The position numbers and the translations under genes were made by a program. Of a DNA stretch of 64,000 nt, positions 1 through 57,595 are shown in pieces. Origin of the DNA: Macrostomum lignano (taxonomy: Eukaryota). Where the stretch lies: contig NIVC01003382.1 in the NCBI GenBank assembly GCA_002269645.1, forward strand, positions 1 to 64,000. Direction: 5' to 3'. Below the pieces are notes generated by a model. It did not search any database. It had not been told where the DNA came from and saw nothing but the letters and a program-made list of their open reading frames with translations. Numbering within the stretch: position 1 is the first letter of the stretch; each line of letters begins with the position of its first letter.

Positions 1-585
1 TAGATTAGAGTAGCTAGATGCCAGAGACTAGATTAGAGTCGCTAGGATGCCAGAGACTAGATTTAGAGTAGCTAGATGCCAGAGACTAGATTAGAGTCAC
101 TAGATGCAGAGACTAGATTAGAGTAGCTAGATGCCAGAGACTAGATTAGAGTCGCTAGCTAGATGCCAGAGACTAGATTAGAGTAGCTAGATGCAGAGAC
201 TAGATTAGAGTCGCTAGCTAGATGTCAGAGACTAGATTTAGAGTAGCTAGATGCCAGAGACTAGATTAGAGTCGCTAGCTAGATGCCAGAGACTAGATTA
301 GAGTCGCTAGCTAGATGCCAGAGACTAGATTAGAGTAGCTAGATGCCAGAGACTAGATTAGAGTAGCTAGATGCCAGAGACTAGATTAGAGTAGCTAGAT
401 GCCAGAGACTAGATTAGAGTAGCTAGATGCCAGAGACTAGATTAGAGTCGCTAGATGCCAGAGACTAGATTAGAGTAGCTAGATGCCAGAGACTAGATTA
501 GAGTAGCTAGATGCCAGAGACTAGATTAGAGTCGCTAGATGCCAGAGACTAGATTAGAGTAGCTAGATGCCAGAGAGACTAGATA
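1..585. repeat. ~28-bp tandem minisatellite (TAGATTAGAGTAGCTAGATGCCAGAGAC and variants), probably intronic in the ankyrin gene
   Basis: About 20 near-identical units visible; the array continues past the window start. Confidence 0.95.
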
Positions 586-603
586 GAGTTTAGAGTCCAA
601 CAC

Positions 604-32500: not shown

Positions 32501-33001
32501 CAGCAGTGAGCGAGTCCGTAAGTGCGGCCGCAAATTCATCTGCTTCCTCGCAGGTGTTGATGGAGACTGGAGCGCTAGTGCAACGATAGGTCTCCTCCAG
32601 GGCAAGCCTGAAGGCGGTCCAGTCGGTATTCCTAGCATTCCGTTTCCAGTAAAGCTGGCCTGCGTTTCGGGCGCTGGTCAGCGTGAAAGAGATGAACTTG
32701 TGATCGGAGAGGGACGCCTCAGGAAGCACCCGCCACTCCCTAGTGCTCTGGAAGAGCCTGGGCGTGGCGAGGGTGGCATCCAGCACCTCCGATCGGCGTC
32801 CGTTATTGAAGGTAGGGGTACTACCCGAGTTACAGAACTCAAGGGTTGTAGTAGCAATATAAGCCAGGAAGTCTTCACCTCTCTGGTTAATATCAGAACT
32901 GCCCCAGTGGGTGTGGTGGGCGTTGATATCGCCTGCCACAAGCAGCTCATAATTTCTGGTGGAGCAGAGCTCGACCAGTGTGACAAGCTCTACTGGGATG
33001 G
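29531..33001 (-). mobile_element. 5'-truncated non-LTR retrotransposon (APE endonuclease-RT-RNase H; LOA/I-group-like) with 11-bp TSD
   Basis: TSD CCCACCGGCTT (minus strand) at 33002-33012 and 29520-29530. Motifs GDINAHH, SDH, KSPGPDG, GSPQGGVLSP, YADD and RNase H FTDGS...WIPGHAG.GNELAD. ORFs 33032-31059 and 30962-29643 are in the same frame, separated by one TAA. Short (TAAGTCAAG)2 tail at the 3' end. Confidence 0.93.
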
Positions 33002-33129
33002 AAGCCGGTGGGTGCTGCTGATATCCTTCCAAGAGCGGCTTTTTTGGGAGGCATGAAAGCTAGGCTATCAAGAAAGCAGTAAAGCAGTAAAGCAGCTATA
33101 AAGCAGTGGTGAATGGTATTTAATGTTAG

Positions 33130-35321: not shown

Positions 35322-36904
35322 GGGGCTCCTGAGTTGCTTTTCCTCTGATGCTCACTGCAGCCTGGCCCATAGACTGATGTTGCAGTTTAAGGCTTGCCAA
35401 GACTGCCAAAAATACAAAAATACTGCCAAAAAAGACTGCCATAGATATTAAAGATCGAGGAAACCATGCTATATGGTTATTGCTACACGATGATAGTTTT
35501 CATAGCTATTTTTAAAATACACCTTAAAAATAGATCGAGAAGGACGCGAAAGACCGCTTAACTGGGAATCACGCATTAATGACTGATGTCGATTTTTCTT
35601 ATGTCTTTGGCCAAAACCCACAGAATTGGAAAGAGAGGGACGCGAGAGAGGGCGCTAATAGACATTCACCACTGCTTTATAGCTGCTTTACTGCTTTACT
35701 GCTTTCTTGATAGCCTAGCTTTCATGCCTGGAAGCATATCAGCAGCACCCACCGGCTTAGACAGGCGAGAGATAACGAATCAGAAGAAGCAAGAGAGCAG
35801 CGGCAAGCTGCTAACAGAGAGACAGATGTTGAAGCGACAACTGAACCATGTCGAAGAGGAAAAAAGGACGGCTATAGAAACGACTTACAGAAAAACAGAC
35901 TGACCTTGAAAAACTGCGAGAGGAATTCGACAACAGCCTTCTAAATTCAGTAGACCTGAGCGGCATGGACAGCAACAAAGACTTGAGCATAGCAGTGGCG
36001 AAGGAGAGGCGAGTCAGCACACAGAAGAAGCGGATGCGTCGGAGAAGCCAGTCAGGATTCGGAAAGTAATTAACATGAACTGCATAACACCCACCGATAT
36101 ATACTGCTATCTGTATTTGTTATGTCATTCAATTAAATAATTATTATTAAACCTAGAAGTAAACTCATTGATAGTTAAAATGCGCAGTCAAACTCTATCA
36201 GTAATAGAGTTTGTTCCGTTTGATAGTGATAGAGTCTATACTAAAAAACGGTATTAAATAAACATTCATAGCGTGCAATGTAGAAAATCCTATTTATCGT
36301 AACTTAAACTCCGTTGTCTGTATGTATTTACGTATGTAAAAGTATGTATTTACGTATGCCCTGCTACTTGCAAATTCTAATACGAAATGCACATTCTACT
36401 TATCCCTAACAATGATTTACTGCTCTGCAAATTGTTTACACCTTTACCCTGCATCCTCTTCCATGCAATTCCAATTCCAAAAAGAGAGGAGAGAGAATTG
36501 ATTAATTATGAGAGAAGAGAGAGGAGAGGAGAAGGAAAAGAGTAGAAAGAAGAGAAGAGTGATAAAAAAGTGGAGATGGATGAGAAGAGTGAGGAGAGGA
36601 GAGAAGTTTTAAAGGCCGCAAATCTAATTTAATACACATTTACTCCAATTTTTGTTTACCTCTATCCCCACTACTTACAAGTGTTTGTTTGAGTTTGACT
36701 TTAGATTTAAGAATGCATGCAAAAACAGTTCCAGGGATCGGAATACAGCAGGCTCAAAATCCGCGGGTTTCAACAGCTCGTGTGACACAAAATTGCACAT
36801 GGATTGTTAATAATTTGTGTTTCATCTACTAACAGTAAAAATATGAACATTTTGCTGTCTAAATTTGGGTTAGCGGCTCGATTTCCAGAATGAGTCAGTG
36901 GGCG

Positions 36905-36943
36905 AGAAAATTCGAGAAGCTTCCTCAGTGCCAGTCTATAAAA
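36905..36943 (+). promoter_or_regulatory. Four-unit heat-shock element plus TATA box
   Basis: aGAAaaTTCgaGAAgcTTCc at 36905-36924 and TATAAAA at 36937-36943. Additional TTCCAGAA (36882) and TGAGTCA (36890) upstream; about 125 nt before the sHSP ATG. Confidence 0.88.
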
Positions 36944-37065
36944 GCGAGACAGCTGGATCCGAGAGTGAGGCAGGATTGGAGCACACAAAGCAACCGCAAG
37001 CAAAGCAACCTCAAGCAAAGCGAATCAATCGCCAAACTCTATCATTTACAAGCGACACAGCAAGC

Positions 37066-37878
37066 ATGTCTCTGTGGATCGCACCGAGCAACGTGTACAC
37101 GCCGTTCTCGCACTCTCTGCCGCTCGTGGCAGCCATGAGCGAGCTGGACGACTGGCTGACGCCGGAGTATGACCCGCTGGTGCAGCTGCTGCGGCACAGA
37201 GGTCCGAGGCGACCGCGTCAGTGGAGCCGGACTGTGGACCTTCGCGGCTTCTCGCCGAAGGACGTGTCGGTGAAGCGGGAGGAGCGGAAGGTGCGGGTGG
37301 TGGCGCGGCTGGAGAACGGAGAGAACGTGACGGAGGTGAAGCGGACGGTGGAGCTGCCGGAGGAAGTGGACGCAGAGAAGCTGAACAGCGGCTTCACCCG
37401 GGACGGCATGCTGGTGCTGCAGGCGCCGTTCAAGGAGCAGCAGAAGCAGCAGCAGCTGAAGCAGCAGCAGCAGAAACCGCAGGGCGACTCCGTGTGGGAC
37501 GAGCTGCGCGGCCTGCTGCGAGGCGACCTGCAATCTGAGGGGTCCGGCCAGCTGGTGGAGGCGGACGATGGCAGCAAGCGGTTCAAGGCGGAGCTGTCGG
37601 TGCGCGAGTTCAAGCCGGACGAGATTCGCGTGCGACAGCAGGGCGACTGCGTGCTGGTGGAGGCGGAGCACAAGGAGGAGGCCGGCGGGCAGCGGGTCCA
37701 CAAGCGGCTGGAGCGAATCTACCAGCTGCCCGACGGCACCAAGCTGGACCAGGTGGTGAGCAAGCTCAGCCACGATGGCCGGCTGTGCATCGAGGCGCCG
37801 TTCGAGGCTCCGACAGCTCGGGAGCAGCCGCAGCTGAAGGACGTTCCCATGGAAACAGAGAAGGCTAATGAACAGTGA
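37066..37878 (+). CDS. Small heat-shock protein with two alpha-crystallin domains (flatworm p40/Tsp36 type), intronless, 270 aa
   Basis: Two ACD-like blocks (VDLRGFSPKDVSVK...FTRDGMLVLQAP and LSVREFKPDEIRVR...LSHDGRLCIEAP). The ORF-track extension to 36898 runs through the promoter and is unlikely to be coding. Confidence 0.92.
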   Translation: MSLWIAPSNVYTPFSHSLPLVAAMSELDDWLTPEYDPLVQLLRHRGPRRPRQWSRTVDLRGFSPKDVSVKREERKVRVVARLENGENVTEVKRTVELPEEVDAEKLNSGFTRDGMLVLQAPFKEQQKQQQLKQQQQKPQGDSVWDELRGLLRGDLQSEGSGQLVEADDGSKRFKAELSVREFKPDEIRVRQQGDCVLVEAEHKEEAGGQRVHKRLERIYQLPDGTKLDQVVSKLSHDGRLCIEAPFEAPTAREQPQLKDVPMETEKANEQ

Positions 37879-39656: not shown

Positions 39657-39693
<37 letters not shown>

Positions 39694-39696
39694 GGC

Positions 39697-39745
<49 letters not shown>

Positions 39746-39748
39746 GGC

Positions 39749-39789
<41 letters not shown>

Positions 39790-39870
39790 GGCAGACAGAC
39801 AGGCAGCAGACAGACAGACAGACAGACAGGCAGACAGACAGACAGACAGACAGGCAGACAGACAGGCAGC

Positions 39871-39907
<37 letters not shown>

Positions 39908-39925
39908 GGCAGACAGACAGGCAGC

Positions 39926-39978
<53 letters not shown>

Positions 39979-40000
39979 GGCAGACAGACAGACAGGCAGC

Positions 40001-40037
<37 letters not shown>

Positions 40038-43000
40038 CATAGACAGGCAAATACTATGGCAGAATAGCATACTTGAAAGCCTTAGTCTTGCCGAGCACAA
40101 TGCCAGCCAGCACGGATCCGAGAATTCCGGCAGCAATCATAGTAAATCCGGCCCAGCCTACTTGCTGCTCGATGTCAGTAGTCAGTGTAGCATTTACATC
40201 AGCTTTCTGAAATGTATGTCAACAAGAAATCAACGGAATGCAGATCCAGTGTGGCCGATTACGCTATCAAGAAAATGTCTTCGGTGACGCGTTGGCCTGC
40301 TCACCCGCATCTCTGGCACAATAATCGGATTGAGCAGAGTTGACAAGGCATAGTAGGTGCCGGTGTTGAGACCTGCGCGTTTGTTTGAAGAAAAATAATA
40401 ATCGGCAGTACGGATGCGTCAGCCACACTCGGTTCGGAAGGGATTATTAATCATATATTTCTACATGCATGCATCTGCTTCCCATTTCATGCCAGGCTGG
40501 AAAAGTCTGGAAAATCCATTAACTCTATTATTCTGCACCTTTCCTGGCCGTTGGATCAAACAGTAAAAAGTAAAAGTCCCTGGGGAACTTTTCTGCTAGT
40601 TTCAATTTCGTGTTGTATTTCATCAACTCGGATGGAAGTGGAGAAGACCAAAGCATACAAAATTAGCTGAAAAGGCATTTGTTGTTTCTCACGGTGTTCG
40701 ACTTAGTTGATTCAAATGGTGAAAATGTAAACTTCCTGTCTAGAGAGAGTTTCAGATTGCAACTCTGCCGCATAGCCATGTCACTATTCCTTCCTGTCTG
40801 TCCTCAGCATTACTGCCTGTCTGCAGCCTTCCTGTCCTCAGCATTACTGTCTGTCTGCAGCCTTCCTGTCCTCAGCATTACTGTCTGTCTGCAGTCTTCC
40901 TGTCCTCAGCATTACTGTCTGTCTGCAGCCTTCCTGTCCTCAGCATTACTGTCTGTCTGCAGCCTTCCTGTCCTCAGCATTACTGTCTGTCTGCAGCCTT
41001 CCTGTCCTCAGCATTACTGTCTGTCTGCAGCCTTCCTGTCCTCAGCATTACTGTCTGTCTGCAGTCTTCCTGTCCTCAGCATTACTGTCTGTCTGCAGCC
41101 TTCCTGTCCTCAGCATTACTGTCTGTCTGCAGCCTTCCTGTCCTCAGCATTACTGTCTGTCTGCAGCCTTCCTGTCCTCAACAGTCCTGTCTGTCTGCAG
41201 CCTTCCTGTCCTCAGCATTACTGTCTGTCTGCAGCCTTCCTGTCCTCAGCGTTACTGTCTGTCTGCAGCCTTCCTGTCCTCAACAGTCCTGTCTGTCTCC
41301 AGCCTTCCTGTCCTCAGCATTACTGTCTGTCTGCAGCCTTCCTGTCCTCAGCATTACTGTCTGTCTGCAGCCTTCCTGTCCTCAGCATTACTGTCTGTCT
41401 GCAGCCTTCCTGTCCTCAGCGTTACTGTCTGTCTGCAGCCTTCCTGTCCTCAACAGTCCTGTCTGTCTCCAGCCTTCCTGTCCTCAGCATTACTGTCTGT
41501 CTGCAGCCTTCCTGTCCTTAGCATTACTGTCTGTCTGCAGCCTTCCTGTCCTCAGCATTACTGTCTGTCTGCAGCCTTCCTGTCCTCAGCATTACTGTCC
41601 GTCTGCAGCCTTCCTGTCCTTAGCATTACTGTCCGTCTGCAGCCTTCCTGTCCTTAGCATTACTGTCTGTCTGCAGCCTTCCTGTCCTCAGCATTACTGT
41701 CTGTCTGCAGCCTTCCTGTCCTCAGCATTACTGTCTTCTGCAGCCTTCCTCTCCGTCAGCATTACTGTCTGTCTCCAGCCTTCATGTCCTCAGCATTACT
41801 GTCTGTCTGCAGCCTTCCTGTCCTCAGCATTACTGTCTGTCTGCAGCCTTCCTGTCCTCAGCGTTACTGTCTGTCTGCAGCCTTCCTGTCCTCAACAGTC
41901 CTGTCTGTCTCCAGCCTTCCTGTCCTCAGCATTACTGTCTGTCTGCAGCCTTCCTGTCCTCAGCATTACTGTCTTCTGCAGCCTTCCTCTCCGTCAGCAT
42001 TACTGTCTGTCTCCAGCCTTCATGTCCTCAGCATTACTGTCTGTCTGCAGCCTTCTTCTCCGTCAGCAGCCAGCAACTCACCATAGGAGACGGTCAGCAG
42101 CACGAATCCCGGATTCGACGCCAGACGCTTCAGCGACCCCGTGTAGGAGCTACCGACGCCGCCGCCGCCTCCGCCTCCGCCGCTGATGACCCCGCCGCCG
42201 CCGATCCGGGCGATGCTGGCAAGGCTGCCGAACGTCTGCGACGCCCGCACGGACGCTGGCGCCACCGGCGGCTGCTCGCCATTCAGCAGCACCGCTGCAT
42301 CCAACCGTCGGGCTATTGTCGGCGGAGTCGGCGGGCCCTCCTTGAACATGGCAACCACGAGGCCGAGCAGCAGGCCGGTGACCGCGGCGCCGCCGATGTA
42401 CATAGCCAGCAACTGGCCGCCCATGTCTTCGACGGTGCCGCGGGACACGAACAGCGGCGGCACAACAAAGCCGACTGCCACGCCCAGCTGGTTGCCGAAG
42501 ACGCCCAGCGCGGTGGCCGTTGGCAGCTCGTCGAGGCCGAACCAGGCGGCCGCCAGCGGGGCCGGCATGCCCAGGATGAAGTTCTGCGCGATGGCGCACA
42601 GAATCTGGGCGTGAGGGGGAGGGCATTTAGGGACGGGCATTAAGAAGCAAACTTTGAAATACACTGTCGAGATGGGCAGATGAAAGAAACTGCATTCAAT
42701 AACTTTACTAACCATTCTCGGGAAATCTTGGGTCAAATGGCAGATATCAATGACTGCTAGACCATTATCTGAGAGCGAAAAAGGCTGGATAGAAAATTCT
42801 GATCGCAGTCGTTTTCTACAATTCCAGCTCGTATTCTACAGCTCGTATTCTAGAGTTCCAGCTCGTATTCTAGAGTTTCAGCTCGTATTCTAGAGTTCCA
42901 TCTCGTATTCTAGAGTTCCAGCTCGTATTCTAGAGTTTCATCTCGTATTCTAGAGTTCCATCTCGTATTCTAGAGTTCCAGCTCGTATTCTAGAGTTTCA

Positions 43001-46000
43001 TCTCGTATTCTAGAGTTCCATCTCGTATTCTAGAGTTCCAGCTCGTATTCTAGAGTTCCAGCTCGTATTCTAGAGTTCCAGCTCGTATTCTAGAGTTCCA
43101 GCTCGTATTCTAGAGTTCCAGCTCGTATTCTAGAGTTCCAGCTCGTATTCTAGAGTTCCAGCTCGTATTCTAGAGTTCCAGCTCGTATTCTAGAGTTCCA
43201 GCTCGTATTCTAGAGTTTCAGCTCGTATTCTAGAGTTCCAGCTCGTATTCTAGAGTTCCATCTCGTATTCTAGAGTTCCAGCTCGTATTCTAGAGTTCCA
43301 GCTCGTATTCTAGAGTTCCATCTCGTATTCTAGAGTTCCAGCTCGTATTCTAGAGTTTCAGCTCGTATTCTAGAGTTTCAGCTCGTATTCTAGAGTTCCA
43401 TCTCGTATTCTAGAGTTCCAGCTCGTATTCTAGAGTTTCAGCTCGTATTCTAGAGTTTCAGCTCGTATTCTAGAGTTCCATCTCGTATTCTAGAGTTCCA
43501 GCTCGTATTCTAGAGTTCCAGCTCGTATTCTAGAGTTCCATCTCGTATTCTAGAGTTCCAGCTCGTATTCTAGAGTTCCATCTCGTATTCTAGAGTTCCA
43601 GCTCGTATTCTAGAGTTCCATCTCGTATTCTAGAGTTCCATCTCGTATTCTAGAGTTCCAGCTCGTATTCTAGAGTTCCAGCTCGTATTCTAGAGTTCCA
43701 GCTCGTATTCTAGAGTTCCAGCTCGTATTCTAGAGTTCCATCTCGTATTCTAGAGTTCCAGCTCGTATTCTAGAGTTTCAGCTCGTATTCTAGAGTTTCA
43801 GCTCGTATTCTAGAGTTCCAGCTCGTATTCTAGAGTTCCAGCTCGTATTCTAGAGTTTCAGCTCGTATTCTAGAGTTCCAGCTCGTATTCTAGAGTTCCA
43901 TCTCGTATTCTAGAGTTCCAGCTCGTATTCTAGAGTTCCAGCTCGTATTCTAGAGTTCCATCTCGTATTCTAGAGTTCCAGCTCGTATTCTAGAGTTTCA
44001 GCTCGTATTCTAGAGTTTCAGCTCGTATTCTAGAGTTCCATCTCGTATTCTAGAGTTCCATCTCGTATTCTAGAGTTCCATCTCGTATTCTAGAGTTCCA
44101 GCTATATACTTACCTGCCTCGTGTCATGCAAAATCATTAATCTTTTGTTGAGATTCGGGAAAAGTACAATGTCCAGTTTTACTTCAGCGGTCCTTTTTAC
44201 AACTTTTTAAAACGAGGCCAAATCAATTAAGAACTACTGATGTTCTACGAGCTAAAATTCATATTTCCGAGCACAAGATCGATGGCCTTGAAAAATTTCG
44301 TCAAGATAACTTCCTGTATTGCATGCACCACACGGTGCAACATTAGCAGCGACCAGGCACCGTAAAAGGCAGGCCTAGTGTTCTATAAATAGATCACCGA
44401 TGTAAAGGAAAAGGCGCACCCACAGATGCAGATTGGAAACATGAAAAGGACTCAATGCCCGCCTGCACAACCGGTCAGACTTTTTCCACTAAAGAAAAGT
44501 ATGATTGTGTAGAAATTCAGACAGAAAGCAAAGAACAGCTCATCAAAGACTCCATCAGTGCTCTCACCTGATGCAAGAACAACTCAACACAAAGACTCCA
44601 TCCAGTGCTCTCACCTGATGCAAGAACAGCTCAACACAAAGACTCCATCCAGTGCTCTCACCTGATGCAAGAACAGCTCAACACAAAGACTCCATCCAGT
44701 GCTCTCACCTGATGCAAGAACAACTCAACACAAAGACTCCATCAGTGCTCTCACCTGATGCAAGAACAACTCAACACAAAGACTCCATCAGTGCTCTCAC
44801 CTGATGCAAGAACAACTCAACACAAAGACTCCATCAGTGCTCTCACCTGATGCAAGAACAACTCAACACAAAGACTCCATCAGTGCTCTCACCTGATGCA
44901 AGAACAACTCAACACAAAGACTCCATCAGTGCTCTCACCTGATGCAAGAACAACTCAACACAAAGACTCCATCAGTGCTCTCACCTGATGCAAGAACAAC
45001 TCAACACAAAGACTCCATCCAGTGCTCTCACCTGATGCAAGAACAACTCAACACAAAGACTCCATCAGTGCTCTCACCTGATGCAAGAACAACTCAACAC
45101 AAAGACTCCATCAGTGCTCTCACCTGATGCAAGAACAACTCAACACAAAAACTCCATCAGTGATCTCACCTGGCTCAAGAACAACCCAACAAAGACTCCA
45201 TCTGTGCTCTCACCTGGCTCAAGAACAACCCAACAAAGACTCCATCTGTGCTCTCACCTGGCTCAAGAACAACCCAACAAAGACTCCATCAGTGCTCTCA
45301 CCTGATGCAAGAACAACTCAACACAAAAACTCCATCAGTGATCTCACCTGGCTCAAGAACAACCCAACAAAGACTCCATCTGTGCTCTCACCTGGCTCAA
45401 GAACGACCCAACAAAGACTCCATCAGTGCTCTCACCTGATGCAAGAACAACTCAACACAAAAACTCCATCAGTGATCTCACCTGGCTCAAGAACAACCCA
45501 ACAAAGACTCCATCAGTGCTCTCACCTGGCTCAAGAACAACCCAACAAAGACTCCATCAGTGCTCTCACCTGATGCAAGAACAACTCAACACAAAGACTC
45601 CATCAGTGATCTCACCTGGCTCAAGAACAACCCAACAAAGACTCCATCAGTGCTCTCACCTGGCTCAAGAACAACGCAACAAAGACTCCATCAGTGCTCT
45701 CACCTGGCTCAAGAACAACCCAACAAAGACTCCATCAGTGATCTCACCTGGCTCAAGAACAACGCAACAAAGACTCCATCAGTGCTCTCACCTGGCTCAA
45801 GAACAACCCAACAAAGACTCCATCAGTGCTCTCACCTGGCTCAAGAACAACCCAACAAAGACTCCATCAGTGCTCTCACCTGGCTCAAGAACAACCCAAC
45901 AAAGACTCCATCAGTGCTCTCACCTGGCTCAAGAACAACCCAACAAAGACTCCATCAGTGCTCTCACCTGGCTCAAGAACAACCCAACAAAGACTCCATC

Positions 46001-46697
46001 AGTGCTCTCACCTGGCTCAAGAACAACCCAACAAAGACTCCATCAGTGCTCTCACCTGGCTCAAGAACAAGCAACAAAGAATCCATCAGTGCTCTCACCT
46101 GGCTCAAGAACAACCCAACAAAGACTCCATCAGTGCTCTCACCTGGCCCAAGAACAGCAGCCAGAAGCGGTCTGGCGCGGCAGCGAAGCACTTGACGAGA
46201 GCGCCAGCAAAGTTGAGCGAGGTCGCGCAGATCGCCGACACTCGCAGCCCGAATCGCTGCAGCAGCCAGGCGGCCGGCAGGATGAAGACCACATAGGCGA
46301 GCATGTAGATCATGGACAGCCAGTCGATGGCCAGATTGGCCTCAGTGGAATCGGCCGGCAGAGATTCGTTATAATAAGACAGCACAACGTCAAACACGAT
46401 GTTGAGGTGAATCCACTGGTAGGCGCTGGACATTGAGTAGCTGCTGAACAGCAGCAGCACCAGCCAGCGCCGACGGTACAGGTGCGCCGCCGCCGCGCCG
46501 CCTCCGTTCTGGCCGGACTTCCTGACTGCCGACGACGACGCCTCGTCAACGTTGTCGTCTTCATCATCGTCGTCGACAAGCAGATTGTCGCCGCTGCTGC
46601 CACCGTTAGCTAACGGAAGCAGTTGGCTTTCGTCCCGGCGGTGCGGCTCATTGCTGCTTCTGCTGCTGCTGTTGTTGGCTTCGTCTGTCGAACTCAT
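38881..46697 (-). CDS. FLVCR: FLVCR-family MFS transporter (choline/ethanolamine/heme), 7 exons: 46697-46143, 42604-42082, 40372-40305, 40206-40073, 39612-39396, 39296-39185, 38963-38881
   Basis: Motifs [62 protein letters not shown] and IKSDLRRQ. All six introns are GT-AG with matching phases (0, 1, 0, 2, 0, 1). Confidence 0.93.
39062..39172. repeat. ~35-bp repeat, 3 copies, in FLVCR intron 6
   Basis: AGCCACTACCCCAACCCCAGTGAGCACTCAGAT repeated. Confidence 0.85.
39657..40045. repeat. (AGAC)n compound microsatellite in FLVCR intron 4
   Basis: Direct inspection. Confidence 0.97.
40795..42060. repeat. 34-bp minisatellite (GTCTGTCTGCAGCCTTCCTGTCCTCAGCATTACT) in FLVCR intron 2
   Basis: About 37 copies. 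Confidence 0.96.
42830..44103. repeat. 20-bp minisatellite (GCTCGTATTCTAGAGTTCCA) in FLVCR intron 1
   Basis: About 63 copies, period 20. Confidence 0.97.
44545..46155. repeat. 44/46-bp minisatellite overlapping the FLVCR exon 1 donor site
   Basis: About 36 units. On the minus strand each contains CAG|GTGAGA; a 44-bp subtype lies near the exon and a 46/47-bp subtype distally. Confidence 0.96.
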
Positions 46698-47811: not shown

Positions 47812-49065
47812 GTAACAGCCAGTGAGGCAGCTAGTAACAGCCAGTGAGTGAGGCAGCTAGTAACAGCCAGTGAGGCAGCTAGTAACAGCCAGTGAGTGAG
47901 GCAGCCAGTAACAGCCAGTGAGTGAGGCAGCTAGTAACAGCCAGTGAGTGAGGCAGCTAGTAACAGCCAGTGAGTGAGGCAGCTAGTAACAGCCAGTGAG
48001 TGAGGCAGCTAGTAACAGCCAGTGAGTGAGGCAGCTAGTAACAGCCAGTGAGTGAGGCAGCTAGTAACAGCCAGTGAGTGAGGCAGCTAGTAACAGCCAG
48101 TGAGTGAGGCAGCTAGTAACAGCCAGTGAGTGAGGCAGCTAGTAACAGCCAGTGAGTGAGGCAGCTAGTAACAGCCAGTGAGGCAGCTAGTAACAGCCAG
48201 TGAGTGAGGCAGCTAGTAACAGCCAGTGAGTGAGGCAGCTAGTAACAGCCAGTGAGTGAGGCAGCTAGTAACAGCCAGTGAGGCAGCTAGTAACAGCCAG
48301 TGAGTGAGGCAGCTAGTAACAGCCAGTGAGTGAGGCAGCTAGTAACAGCCAGTGAGTGAGGCAGCTAGTAACAGCCAGTGAGTGAGGCAGCTAGTAACAG
48401 CCAGTGAGTGAGGCAGCTAGTAACAGCCAGTGAGTGAGGCAGCTAGTAACAGCCAGTGAGTGAGGCAGCTAGTAACAGCCAGTGAGTGAGGCAGCTAGTA
48501 ACAGCCAGTGAGTGAGGCAGCTAGTAACAGCCAGTGAGTGAGGCAGCTAGTAACAGCCAGTGAGTGAGGCAGCTAGTAACAGCCAGTGAGGCAGCTAGTA
48601 ACAGCCAGTGAGTGAGGCAGCTAGTAACAGCCAGTGAGTGAGGCAGCTAGTAACAGCCAGTGAGGCAGCTAGTAACAGCCAGTGAGTGAGGCAGCTAGTA
48701 ACAGCCAGTGAGTGAGGCAGCTAGTAACAGCCAGTGAGTGAGGCAGCTAGTAACAGCCAGTGAGTGAGGCAGCTAGTAACAGCCAGTGAGTGAGGCAGCT
48801 AGTAACAGCCAGTGAGTGAGGCAGCTAGTAACAGCCAGTGAGTGAGGCAGCTAGTAACAGCCAGTGAGTGAGGCAGCTAGTAACAGCCAGTGAGTGAGGC
48901 AGCTAGTAACAGCCAGTGAGTGAGGCAGCTAGTAACAGCCAGTGAGGCAGCTAGTAACAGCCAGTGAGTGAGGCAGCTAGTAACAGCCAGTGAGTGAGGC
49001 AGCTAGTAACAGCCAGTGAGTGAGGCAGCTAGTAACAGCCAGTGAGGCAGCTAGTAACAGCTAGT
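47812..49065. repeat. 26/22-bp minisatellite (GTGAGTGAGGCAGCTAGTAACAGCCA)
   Basis: About 48 copies. Confidence 0.97.
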
Positions 49066-49939
49066 GGTAGCAGGAAGAAGTAAGCAGTGACAAAGGAGTC
49101 GGAAAAATAGCTAAATAAATTAATAACGACTGAAGACTACGTTGACATAAAATGTAATTTCTGAAACGCCAAGAAATAAATCAGTATTGAAGATTTGAGC
49201 GCATGACTCAATTTAAATAGGCTTTATTATTCCACATTTTAGTGCAGCAGACGAATGAGTAGTATGTATGGCGCAAACAAAATCCTGAAGCTGCTAGAAT
49301 GTAACAGACTTCAGTAGAGTGAGCAAAATTATTGTTTTCTGTATCTTTTTGAGCAACTCCCACGGACCGGTAGTTATACTGTAAAAACGTAATTACAAAT
49401 TTCAACAGACTTATTGTAGGCAATCAATTAGCAAACTCTGGTTAAGTAAAAAACTCAGTAATGTCGTAAAAAATGGCTACACTACTTACAGTAGCCAAAA
49501 TACGAGTAGATCTGCGTGAAAGCACTGGAAAATTGGAAGATCAGCAATCAAACAAAATATGTTAAAATGTAGTAGAATTGGCTGGCGTTGTGACCAAGCT
49601 ATACAAGGTGGGAGGTAATATTCTCTGCAGATATGCGGCCACCAACAAATAATACGGTTTATCTAATTAACAAATTTATGCTCAAGAATTAATAGACTAA
49701 GCATGCAGCCATGCTGTTATTAAACACTATTGGCGTCCACATTTCACAACTGCGTGTATTAAATAAAAAATTGCGGCACAAAAATTACAAAGGACTGTTG
49801 CCTTGGATACTGGCAGCTGATTGACACTGCGGAGCTCTCAGATACTCCTTGTAGCTGATTGAACTAATATTTATACAGTAGATAGATGGACAGTGGGTTT
49901 GATATGCCACCTGGCATATATCATAGGTATATATATGCA

Positions 49940-49972
49940 GACAGACACAGATACACAAACAGATAGACAAGC

Positions 49973-50007
<35 letters not shown>

Positions 50008-50076
50008 CAGACAGACAGACACACAGACAGACACTAAGACAGACAGACTGACAGACAGACACTAAGACAGACAGAC
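49940..50076. repeat. (AGAC)n-type microsatellite
   Basis: Direct inspection. Confidence 0.9.
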
Positions 50077-50223
50077 ATGTATTTCAGCGCCTGCTTCAAG
50101 CCTCGGATCGCCGTGTTCCTAAACTAGAAATCTAGAGTTGGCATTTCGAGCCCCAGCAGAGCAGGCAGTCAGCCAAATCCGAGATAAGCGCGATCAAAAA
50201 CAGCAAAACAAAGGAAAGTAAAA

Positions 50224-52665
50224 TCAGGCCGAGTCGCCAAGCAGCGCCGCGATGCCCTGGCAGCAGCCGATGGCCTGCATTGCCCGCACCAGCTGCTGAC
50301 AGTGCAGCGGCTGCAGCAGCTGCAGTCCCTCATACAGCAGGCCTGCCGCGGGTTGCCCCCTGGCCTGGCCGCGTTCTAGCAGCTGACGCAGCTCGCCAGG
50401 CAGCATCTCCAGCAGCAGCAGCAGCGGCTCGAAGACCGCCTGAACAGCCGGGCAGCAGCAGAGCCGGCCGAGCTGCTCCGGTGTGACCAGCTTGTCTGGC
50501 GAGATGGACAGCTTGGCCAGATTGACGGCCGTCATGGAGGCCGGGCCCAAGTCGGTGGAGGAGAACTCGGGCTCCGCAGGCTCCGGGACAGGGACAATTG
50601 AGTCCGTCTCGGTTGTGTCAAGCTCCATCTTAAGCAGCTGACTGACGGATTCCCCGGGCAGGCAGCCGTTCCAGGCTTCGATTGCCCGATCGAACGGCGG
50701 CCGATCTGTCACCACGTATTGGGCGACATTCGCCCAGCTGGACGCTTGAGTTGCCGCCGGCCAGCGAGCTCGGATTCGGTTGCTAAGCAGGCTGGTCAAC
50801 TGTTTGGAGCTGAGCTGTCTGCCCGGACAGGCCAGAGTGAAGACTTCGAAGCAAGACAGCCCGTAGGCGAGTCGATCCTGATCCAAACAGGCCGGCTGCG
50901 GTCCAATTACGCCTGAGTCAAAGCCGCCAATCTAGTAGGGGGCAAATAGGTAAACGGCGGGAGTAATCATGAACGAGTTGCCTCGTCAGCTAATAAGTTG
51001 CTGAATTATTGAATAAAGTCGGATCAACTATGACCAACTTGCCTAAGCTATCTACCTCATTGTCTTGTAAGTTTTATCAGTTCAGCTAACAGTCAGTTAA
51101 CTATTCTTCACTTAGCAGAAATTCGCACGCCTTCTCACCTTGGCCTGCAGACTGGCTGTTATTAAAATGTTTCTGGAACTAAAACTGCCGTGACAAATTG
51201 GCGGCTTCTCAACTCTGTGCAGGTGATGAAAGCCTTCGGCAATTTGGCGCAGCCAGAGCGACAGCAGAAGCGGACTCACCGGCTGGCGCTGCGAAATGGG
51301 AACAAGTTTGATTGAGCAATACTGGCCACGAAACAGATAATAAAACCCATCTTAGATTAAAGGTAAAGCATTTTATATAAAATTTGAAATCTCGATTAGG
51401 GATTTGACATCCCGATTGAGGATTTGACATCCCGATTAAGGATTTGACATCCCGATTGAGGATTTCACATCCCGATTGAGGATTCGACCTCCCGATTGAG
51501 GATTTGACATTTCGATTGGGGGAGGGGGTTGACATCCCGATTGGGGATTTGACATCTCGATTGGGGATTTGACATCTCGATTGGGGAATTGACATCTCGA
51601 TTGGGGAATTGACATCTCGATTGGGGAATTGACATCTAGATTGGGGATTTGACATCTCGATTGGGGAATTGACATCTCGATTGGGGATTTGACATCTCGA
51701 TTGGGGATTTTGACATCCCGATTGGGGATTTGACATCTCTATTGGGGATTTGACATCCCGATTGGGGATTTGACATCTCTATTGGGGATTTGACATCTCG
51801 ATTGGGGAATTGACATCTCGATTGGGGATTTGACATCTCGATTGGGGAATTGACATCTCGATTGGGGATTTGACATCCCGATGGAGGATTCGACATCCCG
51901 ATGGGGATTTGACATCTCGATTGGGGAATTGACATCTCGATTGGGGAATTGACATCTCGATTGGGGAATTGACATCTCGATTGGGGAATTGACATCTCGA
52001 TTGAGGATTTGACGATGGGGGATTTGAAATCCCCATTGAGGATTTGACATTTCTATTTTGGATTTGACAACGCGATCTCAGGTTTTCGGTGCCACAATCT
52101 AAAAGCTCACAATTGTACTGTTTAAAAGTACACTCACCCGATCTGACTGAGCCAGGCTGAACTCCAAAACATTGCCATGCTCACAGTGCTCCATCACAAT
52201 GCCCATCAACATGACATTTTGCTCCATATAAAAAGCCACTGAGCTGAGGAGTGCTGAGTGGTTTGCTTTAATTTTTTTCAATATATTAAACTGATTACTT
52301 ATCAGCTTAGTGGCCGTTGTGCTGCAATGTTAGCAAATTGGTTTTTTATTAGAAACAAAGAATCTGAAAAGTGGAAAAATCATAAAGCTGACAGAGTCTG
52401 AGCAAGTGTCATACATCTGTACGCTTGTAGAACTAGATGTAGGCTTCATTTTCTTCAAAAAGTAGCGCTGATCAGTGGAGTCTTCCTTCCATTTGCAGCA
52501 AGCATATGAGAAGTAGCCGCTATCTGAAATGTGTAAAAAATATAAAGTTAAAATCAACAGATACATAGATAGACAGGTAATTCTAAAAGAAAAAGGCATA
52601 CCAATAGGTGCAGCCTCTAGGTCACGAAGGTTATCTTGATTGACAGTAATTTTACTTGATAGCAT
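50224..52665 (-). CDS. RIPK/TKL-like pseudokinase with probable C-terminal death domain, 404 aa; exons 52665-52602, 52523-52415, 52321-52138, 51288-51139, 50931-50224
   Basis: Four GT-AG introns (phases 1, 2, 0, 0) give a 1215-nt open frame. Kinase subdomains occur in order: DSGYF, FLKK, GIVMEHCEHGN, LRQIAEGFHHLH, HGSFSSRNILI, AKIGGFD, DRLAYG..FEVFT, DRPPF. The helical C-terminus ends LVRAMQAIG..GIAALL. Confidence 0.8.
51395..52050. repeat. 20-bp minisatellite (ATTTGACATCTCGATTGGGG) in pseudokinase intron 3
   Basis: About 32 copies. Confidence 0.95.
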
Positions 52666-52919
52666 GATTCTGAAATTTAAAGAGATGGTGCATCAGTATA
52701 GAAACAATTAATTGAATCAATTTATTAGTTTAAATTCAGTTATTGGTTTATTTTTTCATTTTAAATATTTATCCCCTGTTACTAGCAATTTGTAAATTAG
52801 CATAATAGTAGTACCTGGTACTCGTACAATAGTGCAATGGTTTTATTCCTTGCCTTAGTGGCACTTATTGAGCAGGTAGCATTAAACTATGACAACTATT
52901 TTGCGCATCCAAACACACA

Positions 52920-52976
52920 TGTAAGTCGCTATTGGACGGAAAAGTAGTCACGTGACTGGTATCAGCCAATAGCGAC

Positions 52977-53027
<51 letters not shown>

Positions 53028-54699: not shown

Positions 54700-57595
54700 T
54701 CAGATAAATGCCGCCTCCTCCACGGGGTTAAGTCGGAGAGCCGCGCTTAACTGCTGCGGCGGCCAACAGCGGCAGGACCAAGCGGGGGCAGCGGAGCGCC
54801 CGCCGGCGTGTTGAGCGTCGACGTGAGCGCAATCGGCGAGGTCGGCTGCGTGGCGCCGCCCGCCGAGCCGCCGCCGCACTGGTCCAATCGGATCTTCTGG
54901 GTGGCGCCAGGGACTGAGGCCCAACTTCATCGGGCTCCAGCTGTACCACAGGGAGTACTCCGGGTCGGGACGTTGAAAGATTGCCGGACCCTGAAAGATG
55001 AAAACTGCCGGACCCTGAAAGATTCCTGGCGGAGAGGGCAGCTAGCGAAGCTAGCACTCGACCTCAGCTGCGACGTCATCGCGCTGCAGGAGGTATCCAT
55101 CAAGGCTGACCCGGAAATTCACTCTGAGGACCTGGGTGCTGGCTGGACCTTCTGGTACACCTCAGCTAACCACCGTGGCCGAGGAGGAGTAGGGGCGCTG
55201 ATCGGGCCGAGGCTGCAGCAGAGCTGCTGCTGCGTCTCTCTGTCTGACCTGCTGCTTCGTGTCGATGTCCGGCTTCGCGGCCGGAACGCCCGTCTGTTCT
55301 GCGCATATGCACCGCCCGCCACCCGCCCGGATGAAGCTCAGACCTTCTTTGACTTCCTTTCCGAGCAGGTTGAAGCGACGGCACAGCACGACACGGTGAT
55401 CGTGCTCGGCGATCTCAACGCTGTGCCGCGCCGCTCCGAGCGGTCGCTCTGTCACACCACGCTAGAACGGCAACACTGGAGCGCTGGACGACTTCCTGGC
55501 CCGGCACGATCTGGTGTCAGTCAACAGCCGCTTCCGCCGGCCGCCTAGCAGGCTCGCCACCTTTGTGGGCTGCCAGCGCTGGCGACGGAACGCGCCGGGT
55601 CGGTTCGCCACGCGGAGGCTAGCACAGCGGGACCACGTGCTTTTGCGCTTTCGCGAGCGTGGCCGCGCCATCAACTGCCGCATCATCAACTGCCGCATCA
55701 TCACGCCGCTGGCCCTATGCTCCGACCACCGGCTTGTCATCTGCGACCTTCATGTCCGGGACCCTCTATACCGGCCGCCAAAGCGACTGCAGCGGCGCTA
55801 CTAACGTGCGCTCAAGAACACCGAGACGCGCCGCCGCTTTGCAAACGCCTTCTGCACTGAGCTGGAGGGCGCGCGTGGTTCCGCCAAGTATGCAGCAGTC
55901 AGCGAAGCTGTCCGCACCGCCGCGGAGCAGTAAGTACCGCTGATGCGGCCAACACAGCGGGGACAACCAGCCTGGATGGAGGATGAGGAGGTTAGACAGG
56001 CGGCAGACAACATAAAACGCATCCGTCTGAATGGCCAGCCTGCGCACGAGGCGGAGGAGGCTCTGGCGCGCGTCTACCAAGAGCGGGAGCTCGCCGCTGT
56101 CGACGACGCCATCCGAGCCGTCTCTGCTGCGGGCGGAAAGGCACTGGGGCCAGACGAAGTGCCAATCGAGGCGCTGCGCATCCATTGCGTGGCCACTGAG
56201 GTCACCCTTGTGATAAACAGCGTGCTCGCTGGAGGTCCGGCGCCTACTGAGTGGACCCTAGCGCACATCGTCGGCATCCCAAAGAAGCCAGGCACAACCA
56301 AACTGGAGGAGCACCGAGGTATCTGCCTAATGTCCATCGCCGCAAAGCTTTTCAACCGGCTTCTGCTCGCCCGGCTGCAGCCCATGCTAGATCCCTACCT
56401 GCGGATCGAGCAGAACGGGTTTCGGCCAAGGCGCGGCACCGTCACGCAGATACTGGCCCTTCAGCGAGTCATCGAGGAGGCGCGCACGCGCCAGTTGAAC
56501 CTGATCGTGGTCTTTGTTGACTTCAAAAAGGCCTTCGACTCGGTCGCCAGAAGCGCGTTTTCCGCTGGTGCTTAGAGCGTACAAGGTACCGCAGCAACTG
56601 GTCAATGCCACGATGGCGCTGTACCAAAACACCAGAGCTGCGGTGGTGACCCCAGACGGTCTCTCGGACACCTTCGATACGTCATCCGGAGTACTCCAGA
56701 GGGACACGCTGGCGCCATTTCTGTTTGTACTGGTGCTGGACTGGGTGCTGCAGACTGCTTTGCCCACGGCCGAGGACGACTTACTCCTGCAGCGCCGTGT
56801 GGGTCGCCGCCAACCAGAGCGCCGCCTCAGCATCTTAGGCTACGCCGACGACCTCGCCCTGCTGTCATCAACTGTCGAAGGCGCCCAACATCAGCTGGAC
56901 CGGCTGGTTGGCGTTGCTGCGAGCGTCGGCCTGGTGGTCAACACGCAGAAGACCGTCGTGCTCACCACGCCATCTGACATCCAAGCCGACATCTGCCGAG
57001 GCGCCAATGGGCAGGCGACGCCGCTGCCGCGCTGTCAGCAGTTTGTGTACCTTGGTGGTCTGGTGCCCGATGTCTCCGACGACCTGAGGCGTCGCCGCGG
57101 ACTCGCCTGGGCGGCCTTCAACTTTGTGAGGACCGTCTTACACTCTGCGGCCCTGCCAGACCACCAGCGTTCGGCGCTGTTCCAGGCGGTGATTGAGACC
57201 GTCCTGCTTTACAACGCCGAGACATGGACACTGACTGAGATGCTTGAGCGGCAGGTCGATGTGGCCCACGCCGGCCTGCTGCGCGCCGCCTTCAAGATCG
57301 GCGGTGGCAAGCTTGTCTCCAATGCGGCGCTGTATGCCCGAGCCCACCTTGCCTGCCCCAGCAACCTGCTTTGACGCCATCAGCTCCAGCTGGCAGGCCA
57401 CCTATCTGCGCCAAGACATACTGCCCCGAGCCAGTACAGGAGACGCTGCTAATGCTTCCAGTGCCCTCTGGCAAGGGCAGGCGCCTACCCAGATTGCCTA
57501 CTGGCGCCCCCGACCAAGCCAATGGCCTAGCCTTCCTTCGCTCCTGCGCTCTGAGGCACACCCTGTGACACCCACTGCTGACTCTGGGGCGTAAC
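54700..57595 (+). mobile_element. Decayed RTE-clade non-LTR retrotransposon (APE endonuclease plus RT), several frameshifts and stops
   Basis: Motifs DVIALQE, GDLNA, SDH, GPDEVP, EQNGFRPRRGT, VDFKKAFDSV, GVLQ, YADDLALL and LLYNAETWTLT. Confidence 0.9.

What the first reader, a model, noticed from the sequence alone, without database searches (positions are those of the whole stretch)
50224..52665. Hidden RIPK-like pseudokinase fused to a probable death domain
Seen: five exons splice into one 404-aa frame that the ORF track shows only as unrelated fragments. The beta-3 Lys is kept (FLKK). The alphaC Glu position reads Gln (SNQFNIL), HRD reads HGS, DFG reads GFD, and only about 11 residues separate this from the subdomain IX DxxxYG, so the activation loop and APE motif are missing. 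Established: kinase-then-death-domain is the RIPK1 architecture, whereas IRAK/Pelle have the DD first. Inference: a catalytically dead scaffold for cell-death or innate-immune signalling in a lineage where such components are poorly catalogued.
Basis: partly seen in the sequence, partly recalled or inferred. Interest (0 to 1): 0.72.

Follow-up and report, generated by a model that had tools for sequence, protein, structure and literature searches.

The report
Flatworm dead kinase with death-domain-like tail
This is a real, already annotated gene of the flatworm Macrostomum lignano that encodes a catalytically dead kinase; its tail probably derives from a death domain, but it is a worn-down member of a flatworm-only family rather than a relative of RIPK or MLKL.

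Summary
The five-exon, 404-aa model on the minus strand is correct. All four introns are GT-AG. The junctions match two RNA-derived GenBank models of Macrostomum lignano (PAA74822.1, PAA78578.1), so the gene is not hidden. Pfam finds a kinase domain (E 9.4e-13), but only as far as the DFG position. The αC Glu, HRD Asp, DFG Asp and glycine loop are lost, and about 29 residues of the activation segment are missing compared with paralogues. It is therefore a pseudokinase.

An exhaustive phmmer search of 1.84 billion proteins found no orthologue. The only relatives it found are two paralogues with intact HxD and DFG motifs and a matching C-terminal helical domain; one is from M. lignano and the other is of unknown source.

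The death-domain claim holds only indirectly. The window's own tail scores nothing in Pfam or PDB, and its structure model is low-confidence. One paralogue's tail hits Pfam Death below threshold (E 0.003). The family profile matches validated death domains at P=3.9e-4, which is the level of the IRAK4 death domain, and does not match CARD, PYD or DED.

The RIPK likeness is architectural only. The MLKL likeness sits in the 25-residue HGS…GFD stretch and disappears when that stretch is removed. Most likely this is a non-catalytic adaptor or decoy for its active paralogues.

The parts
52602..52665 (-). Exon 1: ATG at 52665-52663, residues 1-21 plus one base. Donor is ATTG|GTATGC.
   Evidence: Same start as PAA78578.1.
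52670..52671 (-). AG acceptor after a pyrimidine-rich tract (tttaaatttcAG|AATCATG), 4 nt upstream of the ATG. It is the probable spliced-leader trans-splice site and so the 5' end of the mature mRNA.
   Evidence: Sequence. The CDS of PAA78578.1 starts 3 nt before the ATG ('IMLSS'). Gene boundaries in that annotation were cut at trans-splice sites (PMC5730564). That trans-splicing happens here is inferred.
52415..52523 (-). Exon 2: degenerate glycine loop (DSGYFSYA, residues 22-29) and the β3 strand with Lys45 retained (FLKK).
52138..52321 (-). Exon 3: αC helix with Gln68 in place of the conserved Glu, and the hinge MEHCEHG.
51382..52069 (+). 20-bp minisatellite (about 34 copies) filling intron 3. 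Intron 3 is 849 nt here and 608 and 628 nt in the two other genomic copies.
51139..51288 (-). Exon 4: αE helix and the catalytic loop, which reads CHGSFSSRNIL. HGS (51184-51192) replaces HRD/HKD. The catalytic Asn159 is kept.
50665..50931 (-). Exon 5, first part: GFD (50914-50922) in place of DFG, an activation segment about 29 residues short, then the kinase C-lobe (DRLAYGLSCFEVFT ... TDRPPFDRAIEAW), ending at about residue 258.
50482..50664 (-). Exon 5, acidic and Pro-rich linker, residues 259-319. A transposon sits here, at codons 304-306, in the copy on NIVC01000921.
50224..50481 (-). Exon 5, C-terminal helical domain, residues 320 to about 400, then the stop codon. Six helices are predicted. 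It is homologous to the death-domain-like tails of paralogues P0008 and P0100.

Best explanation
The locus is an expressed five-exon gene of Macrostomum lignano. It encodes a 404-aa catalytically dead kinase-like protein.

It is a degenerate paralogue within a family found only here. One other member is from M. lignano (P0008) and one is of unknown source (P0100). In this family an N-terminal kinase domain is joined by a linker to a C-terminal domain that is most likely a divergent death domain. The other members keep HxD and DFG and a full activation segment. This copy has lost the αC Glu, the HRD Asp, the DFG Asp, the glycine loop and about 29 residues of the activation segment. It keeps the fold-defining parts and the C-terminal domain.

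Inferred mechanism: it cannot phosphorylate. It probably acts as a non-catalytic adaptor or decoy that joins or caps the oligomers its active paralogues form through the C-terminal domain or through kinase-domain pairing. This is how the pseudokinase IRAK-M/IRAK3 works alongside IRAK4 and IRAK1, though the domain order here is that of RIPK1.

Shown: the gene structure, the kinase fold signature, the motif losses, the restriction to this family, and constraint on the coding sequence. Inferred: the death-domain identity (about 55-60%) and the adaptor or decoy role (about 35%).
For: Gene structure:
- Canonical splice sites and an open frame.
- Junctions identical to RNA-derived GenBank models (PMC5730564).

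Kinase domain and lost motifs:
- Pfam PK_Tyr_Ser-Thr E 9.4e-13 and Pkinase E 2.8e-9, both above their cutoffs, covering profile positions 19-146 only.
- Motif losses and the activation-segment gap relative to P0100 and P0008.

Restriction:
- phmmer against 1.84 billion representative proteins gave only 130 hits at E<=1e-3.
- None beyond the family matches past the kinase core.
- The best outside hits are multi-kinase proteins of amoebae, fungi and plants.

Selective constraint:
- Three genomic copies have CDS about 99.3% identical.
- ω is 0.21-0.32.
- Exons 4+5 are about 7-fold less diverged than intron 4 (Fisher p about 5e-6).

C-terminal domain:
- Six predicted helices.
- BLASTP tail against tail of P0008, E 0.003.
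- hhalign of the window tail against the paralogue profile: P=1.4e-4, score 29.4; the best of 150 shuffles scored 17.2.
- P0008 tail against Pfam Death: E 0.0029 over profile positions 10-84 of 86, the top hit among 24,736 families.
- Family profile against nine Pfam-validated death domains: score 27.1, P=3.9e-4, 74 columns.
- Controls: the IRAK4 death domain in leave-one-out scored 28.3; CARD, PYD and DED gave P 0.07-0.26; 150 column shuffles reached at most 17.3; the reversed sequence scored 17.9.
Against: - The window protein's own tail fails every direct test: Pfam at E<=10, phmmer against PDB, a three-sequence profile against PDB, and hhalign alone against death domains (P=0.39).
- AF2 without an alignment gave pLDDT 50 and pTM 0.30, and Foldseek found no death-fold match. 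The fold is therefore unproven.
- The Pfam Death hit in the paralogue is below the gathering score. P0100's tail gives no Death hit.
- The hhalign probability is only 35%.
- ω rests on 8-9 substitutions (p 0.04-0.10), and gene conversion between copies could imitate constraint.
- One of the three copies carries a transposon just before the C-terminal domain.
- No functional or expression-level data were available.
Confidence: 0.55

Rival explanations
1. The gene is a decaying duplicate. After the genome duplication in M. lignano, a redundant kinase/death-domain paralogue lost its catalytic residues and part of its C-lobe, and its tail is drifting. It is transcribed but has no function of its own.
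For: - Multiple motif losses, plus three deletions in the C-lobe relative to paralogues.
- The tail no longer scores as a death domain on its own.
- One copy is interrupted by a 2,888-bp transposon, and a UniProt model reads into it and ends at 316 aa.
- No orthologue exists elsewhere in the library.
Against: - The reading frame is intact in all three copies; in one it is split by the transposon, but there are no frameshifts or stop codons.
- ω is 0.21-0.32, and the exons are about 7-fold more conserved than the adjacent intron.
- The fold-defining kinase residues are kept: β3 Lys, catalytic Asn, the hinge and the subdomain IX Asp.
Confidence: 0.25
2. The gene is a true MLKL or RIPK orthologue, that is, a necroptosis-type component in a flatworm.
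For: - The best PDB sequence hits are MLKL pseudokinase domains (6vc0, E 3.4e-6).
- MLKL shares an HG.. catalytic loop and GFE in place of DFG.
- Kinase followed by death domain is the RIPK1 domain order.
Against: - With residues 150-175 removed, MLKL drops to E 0.77 and the top hit becomes STK33 at E 0.05.
- The intact paralogue P0100 shows no MLKL or RIPK chain among its 60 best PDB hits, which are CTR1, BIKE, EGFR, CSF1R, JAK2 and others at about 1e-10. HGS and GFD therefore arose inside this family, which points to convergence.
- Only about 20 residues precede the glycine loop, so there is no four-helix bundle or brace.
- There is no [IV]Q[IV]G RHIM tetrad.
- MLKL is reported absent from Protostomia except rotifers (PMC11476962). 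The RIPK1-5 clade lacks invertebrates except amphioxus (PMC9573974).
Confidence: 0.05
3. The C-terminal region is not a death domain. It is another small helical module, or just a Leu/Gln/Ala-rich helical tail encoded by a GC-rich exon.
For: - No direct Pfam, PDB or Foldseek match for the window sequence.
- Biased composition: 20 Leu, 11 Gln and 10 Ala in 85 residues.
- Exon 5 is 64% GC.
- hhalign probability is only 35%.
Against: - The alignment to death domains covers helices 1-6 in register. An aromatic residue sits at the conserved helix-2 Trp position, and the pattern L(T)xxQLxxxL sits on helix 5.
- The score is specific to death domains over CARD, PYD and DED, and equals that of a genuine divergent death domain, IRAK4.
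- Shuffled and reversed controls score far lower.
- Pfam Death is the best family for the P0008 tail.
Confidence: 0.35

Closest known systems
RIPK1 (receptor-interacting kinase 1)
   Same: Same domain order: an N-terminal kinase-type domain, a disordered intermediate region, and a C-terminal death-domain-like module.
   Different: - There is no specific sequence affinity to RIPK kinase domains.
- The window protein has no RHIM tetrad.
- The window protein is catalytically dead and lacks an activation loop.
- The death domain is unproven.
- The RIPK1-5 clade is reported to lack invertebrates other than amphioxus (PMC9573974).
MLKL pseudokinase domain
   Same: It is the best PDB sequence match (E 3.4e-6). 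Both have HG.. in place of HRD and GF[ED] in place of DFG, and both keep the β3 Lys.
   Different: - The similarity is confined to about 25 residues around the catalytic loop and disappears without them.
- There is no N-terminal four-helix bundle or brace.
- Intact paralogues show that the motifs degenerated independently.
IRAK3 (IRAK-M) / IRAK2: death-domain pseudokinases of the Myddosome
   Same: A catalytically impaired paralogue of active death-domain kinases, which plausibly works by joining the same death-domain assemblies. This is the functional analogy behind the proposed mechanism, and it rests on established knowledge of IRAK-M.
   Different: - IRAK and Pelle have the death domain at the N-terminus; here it is C-terminal.
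- No sequence kinship beyond the general kinase fold was shown.
- The role is inferred, not tested.
Macrostomum paralogues P0008 (UniProt A0A1I8JDI5) and P0100 (source unknown)
   Same: - Shared hinge ME[HY]C.
- Shared subdomain IX motif DR[YF]L[YF]G.
- Shared linker and C-terminal helical domain.
   Different: - The paralogues keep HRD/HKD, DFG, the αC Glu and an activation segment about 29 residues longer, with the motif LRQPD.
- P0008's tail scores for Pfam Death, sub-threshold.

Membership tests
Eukaryotic protein kinase superfamily (Pfam PF07714 / PF00069) | Profile score above Pfam's gathering threshold. | tested here: met
   PF07714 scores 48.5 bits against a cutoff of 23.1 (E 9.4e-13). 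PF00069 scores 37.2 bits against 31.7. The match covers residues 30-174 only. The C-lobe is recognisable by eye and by alignment to paralogues.
Catalytically competent protein kinase | β3 Lys, αC Glu, HRD Asp, catalytic-loop Asn, DFG Asp, a Gly-rich loop, and an activation segment ending in APE. | tested here: not met
   Lys45 and Asn159 are kept. Glu is replaced by Gln68, HRD by HGS (152-154), and DFG by GFD (172-174). The glycine loop reads DSGYFSYA. About 29 residues of the activation segment are absent compared with paralogues.
RIPK family | Kinase domain groups with RIPK1-4 rather than with other TKLs. | tested here: not met
   RIPK2 scores E about 1e-3, behind MLKL, NFR5, RTKC8 and ZAK. 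The intact paralogue P0100 has no RIPK chain among its 60 best PDB hits. No phylogeny was built.
RIPK family | RHIM core tetrad [IV]Q[IV]G between the kinase domain and the death domain (RIPK1, RIPK3). | tested here: not met
   The 404-aa sequence has no such tetrad (read directly). Paralogues have TVSIG in the linker, which is only a lead.
Death domain (PF00531, death-fold superfamily) | Profile score above Pfam's gathering threshold. | tested here: not met
   The window tail gives no hit at E<=10. The P0008 tail scores 18.1 bits against 22.6 (E 0.0029). The P0100 tail gives no hit. For scale, the genuine IRAK4 death domain scores only 22.0 bits.
Death domain (PF00531, death-fold superfamily) | Profile-profile similarity to known death domains, specific over CARD, PYD and DED. 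| tested here: inconclusive
   Family profile against nine death domains: hhalign probability 35.5%, P=3.9e-4, 74 columns. CARD, PYD and DED give P 0.07-0.26. Shuffles reach at most 17.3 against the real score of 27.1. The window sequence alone gives P=0.39.
Death domain (PF00531, death-fold superfamily) | Six-helix antiparallel bundle. | tested here: inconclusive
   AF2 on the single sequence predicts six helices in residues 320-400, but at pLDDT 50 and pTM 0.30. Foldseek against PDB gives no match with E<=0.001.
MLKL | N-terminal four-helix bundle plus brace ahead of the pseudokinase domain. | tested here: not met
   Only about 20 residues precede the glycine loop. The RNA-based models start at this ATG. 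No open frame lies in the 1.5 kb translated upstream.
MLKL | Pseudokinase-domain similarity that extends beyond the degenerate catalytic motifs. | tested here: not met
   With residues 30-149 alone as the query, MLKL scores E 0.77.
IRAK / Pelle | Death domain N-terminal to the kinase domain. | tested here: not met
   The helical domain is C-terminal.

The most novel reading that the evidence does not exclude
Macrostomum has evolved its own kinase/death-domain signalling module in a phylum reported to have lost FADD and CRADD. The module would consist of active kinase-linker-death-domain proteins (P0100 and P0008 type, possibly with a RHIM-like TVSIG amyloid motif in the linker) together with this pseudokinase, which has no activation loop, as a built-in regulator or decoy. 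That would be an independent re-invention of RIPK1/IRAK-M logic.
Probability: 0.2. Interest if true: 0.65.

Novelty: new variant of a known kind. Interest (0 to 1): 0.4.

Why it matters
Flatworms are reported to lack FADD, CRADD and (in the parasitic species) DED caspases (PMC11463336), so it is unclear how death-domain receptors such as their TNFR homologues signal (PMC7519573). A family joining a kinase to a death-domain-like tail, found so far only in this group and including a dead-kinase member, would be a candidate for that missing layer. It would also be an independent example of a pseudokinase regulating active paralogues. A kinase domain that keeps its fold signature after losing the whole activation segment and APE motif is of some structural interest too. 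The death-domain assignment is still only probable, the gene is already in the databases, and no function is known, so for now this is a lead.

Tried and rejected
- First intron-2 donor (AGC|GTACAG) broke the frame. Enumerating all donors and acceptors gave the right one.
- The spliced protein could not be submitted to the exhaustive search or to AF2, so the 99% identical P0001 and the contiguous exon-5 translation were used instead.
- AF2 on the full-length single sequence was useless (pLDDT 37). The isolated tail reached only pLDDT 50, so Foldseek was uninformative.
- Two word-indexed protein searches were wasted. The P0008 kinase-plus-tail query returned only two unrelated kinases. The tail alignment returned nothing, not even family members. 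No deeper alignment could therefore be built.
- The tail profile against PDB gave only chance hits: HscB, MAEA and uL29.
- The SAMTOR hit for the tail (E 0.13) was rejected as noise.
- A hidden exon in intron 4 was rejected.
- Tandem paralogues in the window, L001 or L002 were not found.
- A literature search for the locus tags found nothing.
Full report
**Observation**

The region holds a minus-strand gene of five exons: 52665-52602, 52523-52415, 52321-52138, 51288-51139 and 50931-50224. All four introns are GT-AG. My first choice of intron-2 donor broke the frame. Enumerating all donor/acceptor pairs gave GAT|GTATGA (52414) with ttgcag| (52322) as the in-frame pair with the strongest consensus sites. 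The six-frame ORF list shows only fragments.

**Already annotated**

A protein search returned Macrostomum lignano proteins. PAA74822.1 (BOX15_Mlig006697g1, 403 aa) and PAA78578.1 (BOX15_Mlig032705g2, 405 aa) are 99% identical to the window protein and use exactly the same junctions. UniProt models are named 'Protein kinase domain-containing protein'. The GenBank annotation of assembly Mlig_3_7 derives from a genome-guided RNA-seq transcriptome, with gene boundaries cut at trans-splice and poly(A) sites (PMC5730564). The junctions therefore have RNA support, and the gene is not 'hidden'.

The CDS of PAA78578.1 starts 3 nt before the ATG ('IMLSS'). The genome has ...tttaaatttcAG|AATCATG there. 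This fits a spliced-leader acceptor at 52671-52670 and leaves no room for an upstream coding exon.

**Kinase domain and lost catalytic machinery**

Pfam scores PK_Tyr_Ser-Thr at 9.4e-13 and Pkinase at 2.8e-9. Both are above threshold, but the match covers profile positions 19-146 only, that is, up to the DFG position. Alignment to MLKL chains and to the paralogues P0100 and P0008 fixes the key residues (positions):

| Element | State in the window protein |
|---|---|
| β3 Lys | kept (Lys45, FLKK) |
| αC Glu | lost (Gln68) |
| HRD/HKD | lost (HGS, 152-154) |
| Catalytic-loop Asn | kept (Asn159) |
| DFG | lost (GFD, 172-174) |
| Glycine loop | degenerate (DSGYFSYA) |

Only 13 residues separate GFD from D188-RLAYG (subdomain IX). 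The paralogues have about 29 more residues there, including a conserved LRQPD. GFD and DRLAYG lie in one exon, and intron 4 has stops in every frame, so no missed exon can restore the loop. The protein is a pseudokinase that lacks the activation segment and APE.

**Relatives**

An exhaustive phmmer search of 1.84 billion representative proteins found only 130 hits at E<=1e-3, and no orthologue was identified among them. The hits whose sources were looked up are multi-kinase proteins of Mastigamoeba, Tulasnella and Musa, or other generic TKL-type kinases, and they match only the kinase core.

Two hits are family members:
- P0008 is UniProt A0A1I8JDI5 from M. lignano. It is a merged model containing three kinase units.
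- P0100 is 504 aa and of unknown source.

Both share the hinge ME[HY]C, the subdomain IX motif DR[YF]L[YF]G, a linker, and a C-terminal helical domain. Both keep HRD/HKD, DFG and the αC Glu. The window gene is therefore a degenerate member of a small family that has otherwise intact kinase motifs. The only members with a known source are from Macrostomum.

**RIPK-like or MLKL-like?**

The best PDB sequence matches for the window protein are MLKL pseudokinase domains (E 3.4e-6). They share HG.. and GF[ED]. RIPK2 scores only about 1e-3, behind NFR5, RTKC8 and ZAK. Three results argue against kinship:
- With residues 150-175 removed, MLKL falls to E 0.77.
- The intact paralogue P0100 has no MLKL or RIPK chain among its 60 best PDB hits. 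Its best hits are CTR1, BIKE, EGFR, CSF1R, CDK5 and JAK2, at about 1e-10.
- There is no four-helix bundle, and the window protein has no RHIM tetrad.

The MLKL resemblance is therefore best read as convergent degeneration of the catalytic loop. The RIPK1 resemblance is one of domain order only. The literature agrees: MLKL is reported only in rotifers among Protostomia (PMC11476962), and the RIPK1-5 clade lacks invertebrates other than amphioxus (PMC9573974).

**Death domain: direct tests fail**

The window tail (residues 297-404) fails every direct test:
- No Pfam hit at E<=10.
- Only noise against PDB.
- AF2 without an alignment gives six helices (320-326, 330-344, 348-359, 363-375, 380-389, 395-399), but at pLDDT 50 and pTM 0.30.
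- Foldseek finds nothing.

**Death domain: indirect evidence is positive**

- BLASTP of exon 5 against P0008 picks tail against tail (E 0.003).
- hhalign of the window tail against the two-paralogue profile gives P=1.4e-4 and score 29.4. The best of 150 shuffles is 17.2, and the reversed sequence scores 10.9.
- The P0008 tail hits Pfam Death as its best family, at E 0.0029 and 18.1 bits (cutoff 22.6), over profile positions 10-84 of 86.

I then typed nine human death domains and fourteen CARD, PYD and DED sequences. Pfam confirmed the family of each one. Of the nine death domains, IRAK4's genuine one scored 22.0 bits, just under the 22.6-bit cutoff. I ran hhalign against these sets:

| Query | Target | Score | P | Note |
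|---|---|---|---|---|
| Three-sequence family profile | death domains | 27.1 | 3.9e-4 | probability 35.5%, 74 columns in register |
| Three-sequence family profile | CARD, PYD, DED | 11.8-15.4 | 0.07-0.26 | no match |
| Family profile, columns shuffled (150 runs) | death domains | at most 17.3 | not computed | control |
| Family profile, reversed | death domains | 17.9 | 0.021 | control |
| IRAK4 death domain, leave-one-out | other eight death domains | 28.3 | 1.1e-4 | genuine divergent death domain |
| Window tail alone | death domains | 10.1 | 0.39 | no match |

The alignment in the first row places an aromatic residue at the conserved helix-2 Trp position.

My reading is that the family's tail is probably a divergent death domain, and the window's copy is a further-degenerated version of it. 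I put this at about 55-60%.

**Is the gene alive?**

Three genomic copies exist: the window, NIVC01000921 (L001) and NIVC01000677 (L002).
- Their CDS differ at 5-9 nucleotide positions out of 1215.
- ω is 0.21-0.32 (p 0.04-0.10).
- Exons 4+5 are about 7-fold less diverged than intron 4 (Fisher p about 5e-6).
- No copy has a frameshift or stop codon.

In L001 a 2,888-bp non-autonomous element sits at codons 304-306, just before the tail. It has 15-bp terminal inverted repeats (CATACATGCGCAACT) and an 8-bp target-site duplication (GCCGTCAA). A UniProt model reads into it and ends at 316 aa.

**Mechanism**

The protein cannot catalyse phosphotransfer. It keeps a kinase-fold core and a probable death-fold tail, and its coding sequence is under constraint. 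The most likely role is a non-catalytic adaptor or decoy that joins the assemblies of its active paralogues, as IRAK-M does with IRAK4 and IRAK1. This is inference; nothing here tests function. The main rival is a decaying duplicate.

**Context**

Platyhelminths are reported to lack FADD and CRADD. M. lignano is reported to have a caspase with a kinase-like prodomain (PMC11463336). Flatworm TNFRs may carry death domains (PMC7519573). A kinase/death-domain family in this lineage would be worth following up.

**Verdict**

It is a new variant of a known kind and of moderate interest.

Noticed in passing
window 7398-16355: A 9-kb array of a 28-bp unit (TGTCTGTCTGCCTTAGTGTCTACCTGTG), about 321 copies at 98% matches. 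It causes the extreme AT skew (-0.71) seen in the composition profile.
   Followed up: partly
window 1-589, 1758-2653, 5202-6678, 40798-42068, 42839-44103, 44531-46156, 47821-49066, 51382-52069: Many separate minisatellite arrays, each 0.5-1.6 kb, with units of 20-44 bp. The one in intron 3 of the gene differs in length between the three genomic copies: the intron is 849 nt here and 608 and 628 nt in the others.
   Followed up: partly
L001 11909-14796 (corresponds to window ~50522-50530, codons 304-306): In the NIVC01000921 copy, a 2,888-bp non-autonomous DNA transposon interrupts exon 5 just before the C-terminal domain. It has 15-bp terminal inverted repeats (CATACATGCGCAACT) and an 8-bp target duplication (GCCGTCAA). 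GenBank treats it as an intron, while UniProt A0A1I8HF26 reads into it and stops at 316 aa.
   Followed up: yes
window 29646-33032 (minus) and 54808-57371 (plus): Non-LTR retrotransposon ORFs. The first has an EEP endonuclease, RVT_1 and RNase H. The second is a fragmented copy (EEP and split RVT_1) about 2 kb upstream of the gene, and it is shared with the L001 copy.
   Followed up: partly
window 36898-37875 (plus): An ORF with two HSP20/alpha-crystallin stretches (Pfam E 4e-24), probably a small heat-shock protein gene.
   Followed up: no
window 52910-52991 and 52982-53026: A 26-nt inverted repeat (96% complementary, 30-nt loop) abutting a (TG)22 microsatellite, about 245 bp upstream of the ATG. 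This stretch does not align with the L001 copy.
   Followed up: partly
paralogues P0008 (residues ~755-765) and P0100 (residues ~385-395), not in the window: Both paralogues carry TVSIG in the otherwise divergent linker between the kinase and the death-domain-like tail. It resembles the RHIM core tetrad [IV]Q[IV]G, at the position where RIPK1 has its RHIM. The window protein lacks it.
   Followed up: no
window 49938-50077 and 39657-40046: (AGAC)n / (CAGA)n microsatellites. The first lies about 150 bp past the stop codon of the gene.
   Followed up: no
L001 21145-25102; L002 15030-22231: In both other genomic copies, an MFS_1 transporter gene follows the pseudokinase gene on the same strand. 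The tag 'g2' in BOX15_Mlig032705g2 may mean that the pseudokinase gene is the second gene of a multi-gene transcriptional unit.
   Followed up: no
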